The translations under genes were made by a program, and so were the position numbers. A DNA stretch of 64,000 nucleotides from Octopus bimaculoides (taxonomy: Eukaryota), in the NCBI RefSeq assembly GCF_001194135.2, contig NC_068993.1, positions 53,455,865-53,519,864 on the forward strand, in the 5' to 3' direction. How positions within the stretch are numbered: the stretch's first letter is position 1; the number at the start of each line of letters is the position of its first letter. This document shows, piece by piece, positions 19,999 through 57,514 of the stretch. The notes under the pieces were generated by a model, which made no database searches, was not told the origin of the DNA, and was given only the letters and a program-made list of their open reading frames with translations.

Positions 19999-20025
19999 AT
20001 GGCGGCGGGAGACTTTGACGACGAC
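19999..20025 (+). CDS. MOSPD2: MOSPD2-like gene, coding exon 1 (MAAGDFDDD)
   Basis: ATG in a CpG-rich patch (cgtcgaatATGGCGGCGG). 27 nt followed by a perfect GTAAGT donor, phase 0, splicing in frame to exon 2 across a 147-bp intron. Confidence 0.8.
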
Positions 20026-20172: not shown

Positions 20173-20233
20173 GAGCCGGCCACGCCGGACCACATGTCGT
20201 CTGTAAGACAAGTATTTCTGGACAAATATCGAG
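20173..20233 (+). CDS. MOSPD2: MOSPD2-like coding exon 2 (EPATPDHMSSVRQVFLDKYR+G)
   Basis: ttgttgtag acceptor and GTAAGT donor. The 61-nt exon ends in phase 1, and its terminal G plus AT of exon 3 gives Asp. The peptide parallels the 'ISETRRRFEAEY' helix of human MOSPD2 (recalled, not aligned). Confidence 0.8.
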
Positions 20234-21195
20234 GTAAGTGAAACATCTTCTCTTGTCTTTTACTTTATTGTTGTCATCAGATGTCAGAGGAGCCAAAACG
20301 AAGGGAACACAATCACTTGATTTTATTGAAGCTATTGCTTTTCTCTCTTGTTTTGTCACACAAGTCTTCATGATTATTTATTACTTTCTGTCACTGTTTT
20401 CATCTCTCCATCTCTCTCTCTTTCGCTATCCTCTTCTCTATCTCCTTGTCTTTAACTCTCTCTCTCTCTCTCTCTTTCTGCCTATCCGTCTCTGTCTAAA
20501 TCGTAGTATCCTCCAATCAGTCATTTACAATCAATCTTTCTTTCTCTCTTTCGTCTCCATCTCTCTAGCAACGCCCCTTCCATTGCTATATGTCAGTACA
20601 CACACACACATACACACACACACATATACACATACACAGGGACACACATATACACATACACACCCACATATGTATAGAAACACGCACACACGTCACCCGT
20701 TTCTAAGCATCCCTTCATCTGAAGATTTGTCACTGAAGATGGAGCAATTTAATTCTGATTTACAGTTTTCTTAGATTTTATATTACCATTTTTATGAAAT
20801 ATCCTTATCTTTACTGTATATGAATATGTGTATACGTACGTACATTCATTCATGCATACATACAGACTGGTACCTGTATGTTTGTCTGTAAATATATATA
20901 AATGCCCGTGTATGAATATGTATGTAAACGTGAAGATATCTGTGTGTGTGCGTGTATATATATATATATCATATATATATATTATATATTATATATATAN
21001 NNNNNNNNNATAAACATACGCAAACGCAACAGCATGTCATTATTAATAGTTGGTGATGATGTTTTGGATATTTTGTTTACTTTTGTCTGTTTTCTTTTGT
21101 TGCAGTCATCTGACAACTCTTCGCATATTCACTGCGACAATTATTTCAACTCACACTGCACACAGTTTCCATCTATCTATCTATCTATCTATCCG

Positions 21196-21227
<32 letters not shown>

Positions 21228-21705
21228 ATATATTTATATATTTAATTATATTTATATATTTAACTATATAAAGCTCTCTCTCTCCCATTTGTATGTATGT
21301 ATGTATGTATGTATGTATCTATCTCTCTCTCTATCCATCTACACATACGTACATAATACATACATACATACATACATTCACATACCTGTGTCTGAGTATG
21401 TAGCTATACACATATACGCGCTCACACAAAGATCGTCTAAATGTCTGCGTACATTTACATTTATGTATGAATGTTTTACTGAGATTTTCTCCCACACACT
21501 CGTTTGTTGTTATTGTCAGATATCATGGTAGAAACTAAAACACTTAAAAACACTCCACTCAGTCCCCGAATTGCCACAATCCTTAACCATTTCAAACACC
21601 AAGCTCTTTACAGTTTCGCACTGTCATTGTTCGGTGTATCCAAGCTCTCAACATCCACCAGATTCTGTACCAGTCATATTATGAGGCTCATGCTTTCATC
21701 TCCAT

Positions 21706-21746
<41 letters not shown>

Positions 21747-21794
21747 CATAAGACATTATAATCGGTCATAATGTCTTACGTTTAAGATGATTCC

Positions 21795-21893
21795 CATGCT
21801 TTCCCTGATGAGAAGGTTACAATTTTAACATCAAAGATCCCTATGGATCACACAGGTTGTAATCCTTTGAAACATGTGTAGGAATAAAGTATG
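21795..21893 (+). ncRNA. Type I hammerhead ribozyme motif, intact core, predicted cleavage after GUA at 21880
   Basis: Core CTGATGA 21805-11 and GAAA 21869-72. Helix II GAAGGTTACAA/TTGTAA-T-CCTTT with an apical GATCC-CTAT-GGATC hairpin. Helix III AC-ATGT-GT. Helix I CATGCT-TTCC/GGAA-(TAA bulge)-AGTATG. Confidence 0.8.
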
Positions 21894-22165
21894 CAATTAT
21901 AACATGCGTTTTCTCCAATCCTTAAATTCTTAAATATACTCAAATACCCAAAATTTCAAGNNNNNNNNNNGCAATTATAACATGCGTTTTCTCCAATCCT
22001 TAAATTCTTAAATATACTCAAATACCCAAAATTTCAAGGAGTTCCTGCCTTAAAAACAGGAGCTAACCACAGTTATTTTGTGTTCTTTGCTACATTGGTT
22101 TCTATTAACCCATTTATTCTATCAGAAGAATTTTTATTCATTAAGATAGAAGAAATACACATAAT

Positions 22166-22974: not shown

Positions 22975-23695
22975 CAGAGAAGAAGTAGACAGGAACTGCA
23001 TATGCTGTACCCAGTGTAAGCTCTGGGTGCACCAGAGATGGAGTGGACTCCCATACAGGCTGAGAGGAAGCAGGCTTTGTATGTGACAGTTGCACTGTGA
23101 TTATATGTACTAAAAACACACTGACAATAGATTCTTTTAGATGCTCAATAGGGGCACTAGAAGTAGCTGATAGCTTCTGTTACCATGGTGACATAATTAA
23201 CAGTGGAGGTGGTTGTTTGGAAAATATAGTAGCTCAGGTAAGAACAGGTTGGGAAAAGTTCAGTGGGTGTATTGCCTCTGCTGGTAACAAAGGGCTTCTC
23301 CGTCAGAGTGAATGTCTGATTGTATGATGTTTGTGTTTGAGTTGTGAGGCTGCATGGTAGTAAGACGTGGACCTTGAATGCAGAAGACTTGCAAAGGAAA
23401 GAATAAAGTGTTGGCATTATGCTCTGATGAATGGGTTAGTGTACACGAGTCACAGAGTAGAAATGAGCTGAGAGAAAAACTGGGTACAACAGGAATCAGA
23501 TGTTGTGTACAAGAGGGAAGACTGCGTTAATATGGACATGTGATGTGTAGAGGGGGGTTAGTGCTGCATAAGGAAGTACCTTGTATGCCAAGTGGAGGAG
23601 GGAGACTGGGGAAGACTTGAGACAAAGTGGTGAAGGCTGATCTGAAGAGGGATCATACCGATTGGTGAAACACTGTTGAAGACCAGACTGACCAG
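22975..23695 (+). mobile_element. RTE LINE 3' fragment
   Basis: LEVADSFCYHGDIINSGGGCLENIVAQVRTGWEKF, followed by decayed GSETW, RWxGHV and VKADL segments. Confidence 0.75.
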
Positions 23696-26010: not shown

Positions 26011-26537
26011 GGTGACATATTAATTGGAGGTGGGATAAGAGAAGAGAGAATGGAGTAATGGGGCAAAGTTAAATTGTGGAAAATTGTTTTTCATGTTTTA
26101 TTCCAAGTTGAAATAGTCGCAAAGTCTGAAGAAACCGGTACTAAAATGTTCTTCATGATAAAATTATTTTAGCATTTTCTACCTTGTTTTATTTTCCTTA
26201 TACATATCAACTTGTGTGTTACTTTGAAGGCATCCAGCTGTAGAAACTCTGCCAGATCAGATTGGAGTCTGGTGTAGCCATCTGGTTCGCCAGTCCCCAG
26301 TCAAATCGTCCAACTCATGCTAGCATGGAAAGCGGACGTTAAATGATGATGATGATGATGACATATATGTATATATATACACATAGATATATCTACACAC
26401 ATATATTAATGTTTGTTTCTATTTTTTATATATTTATAGTAATATTTATTTTTTATTTTAATTGAAGGGTTACTCTATACTTTTGTTGAGTACAAACATA
26501 CACACACATACACACACAAATATGTATATAGACAATT

Positions 26538-53814: not shown

Positions 53815-54170
53815 CTTGTTTCAGTCATTAGTCTGTGTCTAAGCTGGAGCACCATCTTGGAGGGCTTTTAGTTGAACAGTATTTATTTTTTGAAGTCTGG
53901 TTCTTTGCTGAACTGCTAAGTTACTGAGATGTAAACAAACCAGCACCAGCACCAGCACCAGTTTTCAAGTGGTGGTGGTGGGGTCAGACACAAATGATAC
54001 ATACACACACATGATGGGCTTCTTTTAGTTTCCCTCTACCAAGTCCACTCACAAGGTTTCGGTTGGCCCAAAGCTGTAGTAGAAGACACTTGCCCAAGGT
54101 GCCATGCAGTGGAACTGAACCCAGAACCATGTGGCTGAGAAGCAAACTTATTACCATACAGGTGTGCCTG
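53815..54170 (-). mobile_element. Family A SINE, diverged
   Basis: Same arrangement as 11709-12126 with more substitutions. Confidence 0.7.
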
Positions 54171-55931: not shown

Positions 55932-56385
55932 GTGAGTATTTTCTATCTTAATAACACGGGGTTTGTTAACAATTAACTTCAACAAAGAAATAACTTCTAT
56001 CCTTCAGTTTTCCTTAACCTATAAATGATTAGTCTTCATGTTTATTAATTCTTAAGGGTCATGGGTAATATATACCAATCACATTGTATTGTAACACCTG
56101 GGTAATTTATGATGATCAAATTGTATTGTAATATTGGGGTGGTTTATAGGGGTGGTTTATAGGGGTGATACTGCTAGATGAATTTTTGGGGATCAAACTG
56201 TATTATATTACTGTGGTGTTTTGTAGGAATATTGTAAAGCTAAAAAGGGATCACTTTTTATTGTAGCTAATGTATTTTTCGCTAGCTTTAAAGAATCCTA
56301 ATGATAAAAGAAAGTTTGTTTGCTTTATAACTATTTCCACCAAGTTCTCTTTAATATAAGTTGTATTTCTTTATGTTTCTTACAG

Positions 56386-56424
56386 GATTAATGTTGGTAT
56401 ATGAAATGCCTTGGATTTTTAATG
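56386..56424 (+). CDS. MOSPD2: MOSPD2-like coding exon 7 (G-LMLVYEMPWIFN)
   Basis: tttcttacag acceptor, GTGAGT donor, 39 nt phase 1-1. Matches the human IVIFDMPWLMN motif (recalled). Confidence 0.93.
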
Positions 56425-57514
56425 GTGAGTTACTGTGTCTAACTTCCATGTGTCTAACTTCCATGTGGTTTTGTCAAATATTTTTGTTATTTTAGTTTAC
56501 TTGAATTACACACTGGCTGTTCAGCTCTGTGACTGTAGTTTCAGAGCCAAGGGAGGTAATTCTACATAACTAATTATCTTAGCTGAAAATATAGACCACT
56601 CCTAAAATCTTTCAACTAATGCAAGGCATTCATCATCATCATCATCATCGTCGTTTAACGTTCGCTTTCCATGCTGGCATGGGTTGGACGGTTTGACTGA
56701 GGGCACGTAAAAAACACCTTTTGAGCATAGTCATTGCCAGAACCGCCTGACTGACCCTCGTGCCGGTAGCATGTAAAAGCACCCACTACACTCTTGGAGT
56801 GGTTGGTGTTAGGAAGGGCATCCAGCTGTAGAACCTTTGCCAGATCAGATTGAGCCTGGTGCAGCTTTCTGGCTCACCAGTCCTCAGTCAAACCATCCAA
56901 CCCATGCCAGCATGGAAAACAGACATTAAACAATGATGATGTACAGGGCATATGTAGAGATAATATTTCTCTGTAGAATCAAAACATGGACTATAAAGAA
57001 GGATCATAAAATAAAGTTGGATTTTATGTATTGTTTGTGCACTTTTGTTGTTGTTGTTTTCTCTTAACCAAATATGGTACCTCAAAAATAGTACCTCTAA
57101 TTATTTTTGTGCATCAATTTGTTTTCTTTACTGCCTTGTGTTGTAAAAAAAAAGCTTGTAGCACTTAAGGTTTTTGTTTTCTTTGTGTGTGTTAAGTTTT
57201 TATTTATATGTGTGTCAGTTGGTTATATTTTAATGTTTTCTGGTTGTTGCTGGTAAGAAAGAGACAGTTCATCATCATCATTTTAATGTCCACTATTTCA
57301 TGATTGCATGAGTTGGGCAGAATTAATTGAAGCAGATTTTCTTTCTGTCACCAACCTTCACCTGCTTCCAAGCAAAGAAATGTTACCCCATGGCCAGACA
57401 TGTTTTCATGGAAGATTGGAAACGAAGGACACTGCATATATGACAGTGACGCTTGTCTACAACTATCACACAATGTCAAACCCAAGAGTCACAACACACA
57501 CACACACACACACA

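What the first reader, a model, noticed from the sequence alone, without database searches (positions are those of the whole stretch)
21795..21893. Intact type I hammerhead ribozyme on the sense strand of MOSPD2 intron 2
Seen: all conserved core nucleotides in order (CUGAUGA 21805-11, GAAA 21869-72, GUA triplet 21878-80). Helix I is 10 bp with a 3-nt UAA bulge. Helix II is 11 bp with one bulge and an apical 5-bp tetraloop hairpin. Helix III is 2 bp capped by AUGU within the self-complementary ACAUGU. AATAAA follows the cleavage site. Established: short-helix-III type I hammerheads occur in Penelope-like elements and retrozymes and often cleave as dimers; helix I bulge/loop II contacts activate natural type I ribozymes such as Schistosoma Sm-alpha. 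Inference: the G.U at 10.1-11.1 (T21868 precedes G) looks like a deaminated CpG from an ancestral G-C pair. If active, the motif would cut the MOSPD2 pre-mRNA 1.6 kb into a 31-kb intron.
Basis: partly seen in the sequence, partly recalled or inferred. Interest (0 to 1): 0.9.

Follow-up and report, generated by a model that had tools for sequence, protein, structure and literature searches.

The report
Orphan hammerhead-like motif in octopus intron
A 99-base stretch in intron 2 of the Octopus bimaculoides MOSPD2 gene has every conserved letter and all three helices of a type I hammerhead self-cleaving RNA, but it is a lone, non-conserved copy that is probably a weakened relic of a mobile element, not a working gene regulator.

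Summary
CUGAUGA (21805-11), GAAA (21869-72) and GUA (21878-80) sit in type I order. They are flanked by a 10-bp helix I, an 11-14-bp helix II and a 2-bp helix III with an AUGU loop.

The context is also correct. The window is Octopus bimaculoides chromosome CM046613.1. The motif lies on the sense strand, 1,647 nt into the 31,242-nt intron 2 of MOSPD2.

Chance is an unlikely source: I expect about 3e-7 such motifs per window and about 0.01 per genome. These thresholds were chosen after seeing the motif.

The 3' half, GAAACAUGUGUA, differs by one C-to-U from the validated axolotl hammerhead GAAACACGUGUA.

No evidence supports "intact and active":
- No Rfam hammerhead model scores it, and neither does a model built from four validated animal hammerheads. 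The 57-nt helix II probably defeats both.
- Position 10.1-11.1 is G.U instead of G-C.
- There is no second copy, tandem repeat or Penelope ORF nearby.
- The Argonauta hians orthologous intron lacks it.

Best reading: a solitary, lineage-specific relic of a hammerhead carried by a mobile element, at most a slow self-cleaver as a monomer. A genome-wide copy search and a cleavage assay remain decisive.

The parts
21795..21804 (+). Helix I, 5' strand (CAUGCUUUCC)
   Evidence: Pairs with 21881-21893: 10 bp, one G.U.
21805..21811 (+). Core box 1, C3 U4 G5 A6 U7 G8 A9 (CUGAUGA)
   Evidence: Read directly. It is one of 13 CTGATGA boxes in the window and the only one followed by the rest of the motif.
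21812..21868 (+). Helix II, 57 nt. 21812-21822 pairs with 21857-21868 (11 bp, bulged T21863, closing pair G10.1.U11.1). It can extend to 14 bp. It encloses an internal loop and an apical GAUCC-CUAU-GGAUC hairpin at 21836-21849.
   Evidence: It is far longer than the 4 bp of canonical and the 6-8 bp of Penelope-type animal hammerheads (PMC4209133).
21869..21871 (+). Core box 2, G12 A13 A14
21872..21879 (+). Helix III, ACAUGUGU: A15.1-U16.1 and C15.2-G16.2 with loop AUGU. It is self-complementary if the two central U.G pairs are allowed, so two copies could form an 8-bp intermolecular helix III.
   Evidence: The self-duplex is -6 to -8 kcal/mol, against -10 to -12 for ACACGUGU. It differs by one C-to-U from the validated axolotl HHR_Amex2.
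21880..21880 (+). A17. The predicted cleavage is between 21880 and 21881.
   Evidence: Position follows from the hammerhead numbering. The GUA triplet is the same as in axolotl Ax353. Cleavage itself was not tested.
21881..21893 (+). Helix I, 3' strand (GGAA-UAA-AGUAUG), with a UAA bulge at 21885-21887. It contains AATAAA at 21883-21888.
21702..21743 (.). (TA)n microsatellite directly upstream of the unit that carries the motif
   Evidence: (TA)n is a reported insertion target of the Naiad clade of Penelope-like elements (PMC8557442). The window has 30 such runs, so the adjacency is weak evidence.
21744..22154 (+). Unique segment of about 333 bp between the (TA)n and (CA)n microsatellites, measured after removing the assembly duplication. 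It carries the motif and is a possible solo element.
   Evidence: It has no copy elsewhere in 82 kb of O. bimaculoides or 49 kb of A. hians. Its fold gives z = -2.4 to -2.7 and is not rod-like.
20173..20233 (+). MOSPD2 coding exon 2 (EPATPDHMSSVRQVFLDKYR). Intron 2 starts at 20234 (GTAAGT).
   Evidence: tblastn of XP_052828219.1 (P0152), 100% identity.
51476..51641 (+). MOSPD2 coding exon 3. Intron 2 ends at 51475.

Best explanation
The sequence is a genuine hammerhead-type fold in type I topology, with all invariant core nucleotides. It most likely descends from the self-cleaving motif of a mobile element, either a non-LTR retrozyme or a Penelope-like element. It now sits as a single orphan copy in intron 2 of Octopus bimaculoides MOSPD2.

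It is transcribed as part of the pre-mRNA. If folded correctly, it would cut between A21880 and G21881, leaving a 2',3'-cyclic phosphate and a 5'-OH.

Four features should make it a very slow or inactive self-cleaver in the cell:
- Helix III is only 2 bp plus a tetraloop. This design works efficiently only when two copies dimerise, and no second copy is nearby.
- The 10.1-11.1 pair is G.U instead of G-C.
- The loop-3 palindrome is weakened by a U.G pair.
- Helix II is too long to place a loop against helix I in the canonical way.

The intron is therefore expected to be spliced and degraded as usual, with no measurable effect on MOSPD2.

Shown here: the anatomy, the gene context, the improbability of a chance origin, and the absence from Argonauta. 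Inferred: the mobile-element origin and the low activity.
For: - Core and helices were verified.
- Chance expectation is about 3e-7 per window and about 0.006 per Gb when helices hold at most one G.U each. The only junction of that quality in the real window is this one.
- Helix III has the published animal type I design, a 1-2 bp stem with a palindromic loop (PMC4209133). [quoted passage not shown]
- GAAACAUGUGUA matches 11 of 12 positions of axolotl Ax353, GAAACACGUGUA. By my arithmetic, only about 0.6-1.6% of chance motifs would have such a helix III.
- The axolotl motif with this helix III cleaves only 22% in 1 h as a monomer but efficiently as a dimer.
- CpG observed/expected is 0.35 with a TpG excess. 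This fits C-to-T decay at T21868 and T21875.
- Solo copies of such elements in introns are common in Xenopus (bioRxiv 10.64898/2026.07.22.740005).
- The motif is absent from the A. hians orthologous intron, although flanking islands are conserved.
Against: - No Rfam hammerhead family reaches even about 12 bits on a 113-nt slice.
- A covariance model built from four validated animal type I hammerheads recovers only the GAAACAUGUGU fragment, at 6.2 bits.
- A 57-nt helix II of 11-14 bp is not described for animal type I families.
- Helix I is 4 bp, a bulge, then 6 bp, not 6 bp plus a loop. The 2.1-1.1 pair is C-G, not the A-U seen in all four validated examples.
- There is no tandem repeat or second copy in 131 kb of octopod DNA, and no match in a metagenome scan.
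- No RT or GIY-YIG domain lies in ORF fragments at 17-28 kb.
- The 333-nt unit does not fold into a rod like retrozyme circles.
- The statistical thresholds were chosen after the fact.
Confidence: 0.55

Rival explanations
1. Chance look-alike. This reading sees an AT-rich, imperfect long hairpin (21787-21900) whose asymmetric internal loop happens to spell CUGAUGA on one side and GAAA...UA on the other. It has no hammerhead ancestry and no function.
For: - The three helices are nearly concentric, so the whole region resembles one long hairpin.
- With G.U counted freely, about 28 non-repetitive loci in the window form junctions with helices of at least 10 and 11 bp. The expected number of full chance motifs is then about 0.7 per Gb.
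- There is no covariance-model support.
- It is a single copy in all DNA available here and is not conserved in Argonauta.
- G10.1-C11.1 is missing.
- Nearly self-complementary octamers are twice as common in this microsatellite-rich window as a composition model predicts.
Against: - The helices hold only two G.U in 21 pairs. With that restriction the chance rate falls to about 0.006 per Gb, about 3e-7 per window.
- The short, nearly palindromic helix III and the 11/12 match to a validated axolotl hammerhead are features that chance motifs rarely show.
Confidence: 0.25
2. Active intronic ribozyme that the host uses. In this reading the motif cleaves nascent MOSPD2 pre-mRNA co-transcriptionally. 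About 29.6 kb of intron is transcribed after it, which gives many minutes for cleavage. Cleavage would expose the downstream RNA to 5'-3' degradation and lower mRNA output, in the manner proposed for the CPEB3 ribozyme.
For: - The catalytic core is complete and the motif is on the sense strand.
- The long downstream intron gives a slow ribozyme time to act. This logic is described for CPEB3 in PMC10274809 (abstract).
- An axolotl motif with the same helix III design and a U.U mismatch at 10.1-11.1 still cleaves 22% per hour as a monomer.
- Predicted folding energies do not argue against it. Validated hammerheads are also not the predicted minimum-energy fold.
Against: - The motif is absent from the orthologous A. 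hians intron, while nearby islands at 21037-21157 and 26221-26377 are conserved.
- No recognisable loop-loop tertiary contact can be assigned.
- There is no dimer partner.
- At the axolotl monomer rate only a few per cent would be cut in 10-15 min (my estimate).
- In Xenopus, retrozymes are depleted from introns, which suggests selection against such insertions.
Confidence: 0.1

Closest known systems
Canonical type I hammerheads of animal non-LTR retrozymes (axolotl HHR_Amex2, mussel, coral; PMC7229834)
   Same: The core is identical and the topology is type I. Helix III is a 2-bp stem plus a tetraloop with C15.2-G16.2, and it is nearly self-complementary. The GUA cleavage triplet is the same as in Ax353, and GAAACAUGUGUA differs from GAAACACGUGUA by one base.
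   Different: The known motifs have helix I of 6 bp and helix II of 4 bp with a 5-6-nt loop. They sit in tandem 170-400-bp repeats that fold into rods. Here helix II is 57 nt and helix I is 4+6 bp with a bulge. The copy is single and does not fold into a rod. A covariance model built from these sequences does not recover it.
Minimal hammerheads of Penelope-like elements (PMC4209133)
   Same: Helix II is longer than canonical, helix III is short and palindromic, and action as a dimer is expected. Most copies in a genome are dispersed single motifs from truncated elements. The candidate lies next to (TA)n, a reported target of one Penelope-like clade.
   Different: Those motifs have helix II of 6-8 bp, helix I of 4-5 bp, often an extra base between A9 and G10.1, and a conserved G10.1-C11.1. 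They lie in flanking repeats of an RT/GIY-YIG ORF. No such ORF is detectable at 17-28 kb. Here 10.1-11.1 is G.U.
[quoted passage not shown]
   Same: A type I hammerhead on the sense strand of an intron of a protein-coding gene.
   Different: Those are conserved across orthologous introns and have their own Rfam families. This motif is missing from the Argonauta orthologue and matches no Rfam family.
CPEB3 HDV-like intronic ribozyme (PMC10274809)
   Same: It is a functional analogy only: a self-cleaver inside a long intron whose rate relative to transcription of the downstream intron would set the yield of mRNA.
   Different: It has a different fold and catalytic family. CPEB3 is conserved in mammals and has been tested experimentally.

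Membership tests
Hammerhead ribozyme, type I | Invariant core: C3 U4 G5 A6 N7 G8 A9, G12 A13 A14, A15.1-U16.1, and H17 not G | tested here: met
   CUGAUGA 21805-11, GAA 21869-71, A21872-U21879, A21880.
Hammerhead ribozyme, type I | Three helices around the core, with helix I open-ended | tested here: met
   Helix I 10 bp, helix II 11-14 bp, helix III 2 bp. It is the only such site in the window.
Hammerhead ribozyme, type I | G10.1-C11.1 pair closing helix II, highly conserved in natural hammerheads | tested here: not met
   G21812.U21868 wobble. A natural active family with a U.U mismatch at this position exists, so this weakens the case without excluding it.
Hammerhead ribozyme, type I | Score at or above the gathering threshold of an Rfam hammerhead covariance model | tested here: not met
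   No hammerhead hit at the gathering score or at E<=10 on slices of 701 and 113 nt, and none at E<=1 on the whole window. The custom model R1 gives only a 6.2-bit fragment. The 57-nt helix II probably explains this.
Hammerhead ribozyme, type I | Mg2+-dependent self-cleavage 3' of position 17 | not testable with these tools
   Needs in vitro transcription of 21780-21910.
Hammerhead ribozyme, type I | Helix I / helix II tertiary contact needed for activity at cellular Mg2+ | tested here: inconclusive
   The UAA bulge lies 4 bp up helix I and the U bulge 5 bp up helix II. No canonical loop 1 / loop 2 motif can be assigned from sequence.
Animal type I hammerheads (retrozyme / Penelope type) | Short helix III (1-2 bp) with a palindromic loop, allowing a dimer | tested here: met
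   ACAUGUGU is self-complementary with two central U.G pairs. The criterion is stated in PMC4209133.
Animal type I hammerheads (retrozyme / Penelope type) | Membership of a multi-copy family with compensatory changes in the helices | tested here: inconclusive
   No copy in the window, in 17.7 kb more of the same chromosome, or in 49 kb of A. hians. One metagenome scan gave only an unrelated repeat array. The octopus genomes could not be searched as DNA.
Non-LTR retrozyme | Tandem 170-400-bp repeats, each with a hammerhead, encoding a highly self-paired circular RNA | tested here: not met
   There is no tandem copy. The 333-nt unit folds into local hairpins and is not rod-like, z about -2.5. 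A solo monomer cannot be excluded.
Penelope-like element | Hammerhead inside a flanking repeat of an RT plus GIY-YIG ORF | tested here: not met
   No RT or GIY-YIG Pfam hit in stop-free fragments at 17-28 kb. A truncated 3' remnant cannot be excluded.
Conserved intronic hammerhead (HH9 / HH10 type) | Conservation at the orthologous intron position in related species | tested here: not met
   Absent from A. hians MOSPD2 intron 2 by blastn, nhmmer, the descriptor, R1 and Rfam. The O. sinensis and O. vulgaris loci were not retrievable.

The most novel reading that the evidence does not exclude
A catalytically competent, octopus-lineage hammerhead variant with an extended, branched helix II that cleaves MOSPD2 pre-mRNA co-transcriptionally and tunes its expression. 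It would be the first functional intronic hammerhead described in a cephalopod, and a variant invisible to current Rfam models.
Probability: 0.07. Interest if true: 0.6.

Novelty: new member of a known kind. Interest (0 to 1): 0.3.

Why it matters
If it is real and part of a family, it would add cephalopods to the animals known to carry hammerhead-bearing mobile elements. Two full-text searches found no paper describing a cephalopod hammerhead.

It would also show a long-helix-II architecture that the standard covariance models miss. That would mean current hammerhead counts in invertebrate genomes are underestimates.

As an orphan relic in one intron, it has little consequence for MOSPD2 biology.

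Tried and rejected
- **Rfam scans.** I ran the gathering threshold on the window, E-value mode on slices of 701 and 113 nt, E-value mode on the whole window, and the gathering threshold on L002 and L003. No hammerhead family appeared. The listed hits are microsatellite artefacts of miRNA models.
- **Custom covariance model R1.** It was built from four validated hammerheads. It did not recover the candidate. Its best window hits (50726, 4055, 59820) have defective cores.
- **Folding energy as a test.** The hammerhead fold is 4.8 kcal/mol above the predicted minimum, and helix II has a pair probability of 0.03. I rejected this as evidence because validated hammerheads show gaps of 0.5-7.4 kcal/mol.
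- **Metagenome pattern scan.** The single hit is a CRISPR-like repeat array and is unrelated.
- **First protein search with concatenated exons.** It found nothing. The exhaustive HMMER search then identified the gene.
- **Exact look-ups of three window ORFs.** None was on record.
- **O. vulgaris and O. sinensis orthologous loci.** The gene ranges are 102 and 109 kb, beyond the retrieval limit.
- **Pfam and PDB on short exon strings.** There was no hit until more exons were added, then CRAL_TRIO at E = 1e-14.
- **Retrozyme rod test on the 333-nt unit.** It is not rod-like.
- **(TA)n adjacency as a mark of Penelope insertion.** The evidence is too weak, because the window has 30 such runs.
- **Tc1-like transposase search to sample more octopus DNA.** Hits were single-contig and mostly of unknown origin, so I did not pursue it.
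- **Sequence strings in the literature.** No match.

Full report
**Observation.**
- CTGATGA occupies 21805-21811, GAAA 21869-21872 and GTA 21878-21880.
- The order is that of a type I hammerhead: helix I 5' strand, C3-A9, helix II hairpin, G12-A14, helix III hairpin, H17, helix I 3' strand.
- Helix I (21795-21804 with 21881-21893) has 10 pairs, one of them G.U, and a UAA bulge at 21885-21887.
- Helix II (21812-21822 with 21857-21868) has 5+6 pairs around bulged T21863. It can extend to 14 pairs. It encloses an internal loop and a GAUCC/GGAUC hairpin.
- Helix III is A21872-U21879 and C21873-G21878, with loop AUGU.
- A descriptor that accepts canonical and minimal hammerheads finds this one site and no other on either strand, among 13 CTGATGA boxes.

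**Where it is.**
- An exhaustive HMMER search with the exon-encoded peptide found a 97%-identical Octopus bimaculoides protein and an 86%-identical Argonauta hians protein named MOSPD2-like.
- A word-indexed search with the Argonauta protein returned O. bimaculoides MOSPD2 (XP_052828219.1) and the O. vulgaris and O. sinensis orthologues.
- The locus fetched for the O. bimaculoides protein (L003, GCA_001194135.2, CM046613.1) contains the window sequence exactly, offset by 11,598 bases.
- Mapping the protein back gives coding exon 1 at 12599-12685, exon 2 at 20173-20233 and exon 3 from 51476.
- Intron 2 is therefore 20234-51475, which is 31,242 nt. The predicted cleavage site is 1,647 nt into it, on the sense strand.

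**Is it more than chance?** I simulated 100 Mb from a first-order Markov model of the window.
- A minimal motif (3-bp helices, 2-bp helix III) occurs 9.3e-7 times per base and strand, or 0.1 per window.
- Requiring helices of at least 10 and 11 bp, with one bulge and G.U counted as a pair, lowers this to about 3.7e-10. That is 4e-5 per window but about 0.7 per Gb, so of order one or two in an octopus genome. I take the genome size as about 2.3-2.7 Gb from my own knowledge.
- In the real window about 28 non-repetitive loci form such junctions regardless of core sequence. Long helices alone are therefore cheap under permissive rules.
- The candidate's helices, however, hold only two G.U in 21 pairs. 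With at most one G.U per helix, the helix probabilities fall to 2.0e-4 and 6.4e-5.
- The full-motif rate is then about 2.8e-12 per base and strand (my arithmetic). That is 3e-7 per window and about 0.006 per Gb.
- In the real window the only non-repetitive junction of that quality is the candidate itself.
- These thresholds were set after seeing the motif, so the numbers are optimistic by some factor. Even so, pure chance is not the best explanation.

**Comparison with validated hammerheads.**
- Cervera and De la Pena describe canonical animal type I hammerheads as helix I of 6 bp, helix II of 4 bp, and helix III of 1-2 bp capped by a small palindromic loop. These act as dimers (PMC4209133).
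- As arguments against randomness they list consensus families with covariation, the conserved G10.1-C11.1 pair, and palindromic 15.2-16.2 and loop 3 positions.
- The supplement of PMC7229834 gives four experimentally cleaving motifs. The axolotl Ax353 motif ends GAAACACGUGUA and the candidate ends GAAACAUGUGUA, a single C-to-U difference at a CpG.
- The candidate's ACAUGUGU is still self-complementary if two U.G pairs are allowed. Its self-duplex is about 4 kcal/mol weaker than that of ACACGUGU.
- Nearly self-complementary A......T octamers make up 13% of such octamers in this microsatellite-rich window.
- By my estimate only about 0.6-1.6% of chance motifs would carry a short palindromic helix III. 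This is independent support for hammerhead ancestry.
- CpG is strongly depleted here (observed/expected 0.35), so C-to-T decay at T21875 and T21868 is plausible.

**What does not fit.**
- No Rfam hammerhead family matches at the gathering score or at E<=10, even on a 113-nt slice where hits of 12-15 bits are listed.
- A covariance model I built from the four validated motifs recovers only the GAAACAUGUGU fragment, at 6.2 bits.
- The likely reason is the 57-nt helix II. That same feature is undescribed for animal type I families.
- Helix I is also atypical, at 4 bp, a bulge, then 6 bp. The 2.1-1.1 pair is C-G, not the A-U of all four validated motifs. The 10.1-11.1 pair is G.U.
- The predicted minimum-energy fold is not the hammerhead (-23.8 against -19.0 kcal/mol). 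The same is true of the validated motifs, so this test does not discriminate.

**Genomic context.**
- There is no second copy or tandem repeat in the window, in 17.7 kb more of the chromosome, or in 49 kb of A. hians.
- A metagenome scan for the helix-II-specific pattern found only a CRISPR-like array.
- Stop-free fragments between 17 and 28 kb give no RT or GIY-YIG hit.
- The motif lies in a unique segment of about 333 bp between a (TA)n and a (CA)n run. That size fits a retrozyme monomer. (TA)n is a known target of the Naiad clade of Penelope-like elements, which itself lacks canonical hammerheads. But the window has 30 such runs, and the unit does not fold into a rod.

**Conservation.**
- The A. 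hians MOSPD2 locus (L002) aligns with the window at the exons and at intronic islands 21037-21157 and 26221-26377.
- It has nothing matching the motif or its 333-bp unit by blastn, nhmmer, descriptor, R1 or Rfam.
- The motif is thus not an ancient conserved element of this intron.
- The closer O. sinensis and O. vulgaris loci exceed the retrieval limit.

**How it most likely works.**
- I commit to the following: the motif is a relic of a hammerhead carried by a mobile element, transcribed within the intron.
- As a lone copy with a 2-bp helix III it is at best a very slow self-cleaver.
- The nearest tested analogue, axolotl HHR_Amex2, cuts 22% in an hour as a monomer and efficiently only as a dimer.
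- The candidate additionally has a weakened loop-3 palindrome, a wobble at 10.1-11.1, and no assignable helix I / helix II contact.
- About 29.6 kb of intron remains to be transcribed after the motif. A slow ribozyme would therefore have minutes to act, as argued for CPEB3. At the axolotl monomer rate only a few per cent would be cut (my estimate).
- I give this reading 0.55, a chance look-alike 0.25, and a host-relevant active ribozyme 0.1.

**Verdict.**
'Intact hammerhead' is only partly supported.
- Hammerheads in introns and solo copies of hammerhead elements are already known.
- The possible novelty is limited to the taxon and the long helix II.
- A genome-wide copy search, the Octopus-Octopus intron alignment and a simple cleavage assay would settle the question.

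Noticed in passing
window 21893-21960 and 21971-22038, around the N run 21961-21970: An exact 68-bp duplication flanks a 10-N gap. This looks like an assembly join artefact. It starts at the last base of helix I. The chromosome-level record shows the same thing.
   Followed up: partly
window 56385-56492 (P0152 residues 207-242): The O. bimaculoides MOSPD2 model reads straight on after ...EMPWIFN into GELLCLTSMCLTSMWFCQIFLLF. The O. vulgaris and A. hians proteins continue AAWKIIKTWLSPEAVQKIKF instead. The RefSeq model probably runs into an intron because the true exons fall in assembly gaps.
   Followed up: partly
window 19999-20025: An alternative first coding exon, ATGGCGGCGGGAGACTTTGACGACGAC followed by GTAAGT, encodes MAAGDFDDD. 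This is the N-terminus of the O. vulgaris protein, which is also O. sinensis isoform X2. The O. bimaculoides model uses an exon at 12599-12685 instead.
   Followed up: partly
window 21037-21157 and 26221-26377; L002 5647-5760 and 9134-9285: Two islands inside intron 2 are 73-86% identical between Octopus and Argonauta, while the rest of the intron does not align. They are unique in both loci and could be regulatory elements or unannotated exons.
   Followed up: no
window 50726-50765: The best hit of the custom hammerhead model (16.1 bits, E about 0.03) is GCUUAGCUGAGAAAGACUAAUAAGACUGAAACAUGUCUGU. It ends like the axolotl GAAACAUGUC motif, but it has A at position 8 and mismatches in helices I and II, so it cannot be a working hammerhead.
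   Followed up: partly
window 41148-41693, minus strand: An ORF of 181 aa starts like a Tc1/mariner transposase (HTH_23, E = 1e-5) and then degenerates into a repeat. It has hundreds of 60-78%-identical relatives, including an O. sinensis protein.
   Followed up: partly
window about 22990-23600, plus strand: Frame-shifted fragments such as CTQCKLWVHQRWSGL and LEVADSFCYHGDIINSGGGC resemble, from memory, the 3' part of invertebrate LINE ORFs. Pfam gives no hit.
   Followed up: partly
whole window: CpG observed/expected is 0.35, TpG and CpA are in excess at about 1.3, GC content is 37.7%, and there are 18 N runs and 30 (TA)n runs. The strong CpG depletion extends across the introns.
   Followed up: no
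window 51042-51109, 54023-54085, 56628-56700; L002 224-291, 38399-38463, 11341-11409: Short interspersed repeats, whose translations recur as ...GLLSVSVYQIHSQGFG..., are shared at 81-86% identity between the Octopus and Argonauta loci at non-orthologous positions. This points to an old SINE-like family.
   Followed up: no
L001 1380-1550 (metagenome contig Ga0124853_1113318): A repeat of about 36 nt, CTTTGAAACCCCGCCCTGATGAGAAGGGATTAAGAC, is spaced by about 30 nt of unique sequence, like a CRISPR array. It matched the search pattern by coincidence.
   Followed up: no
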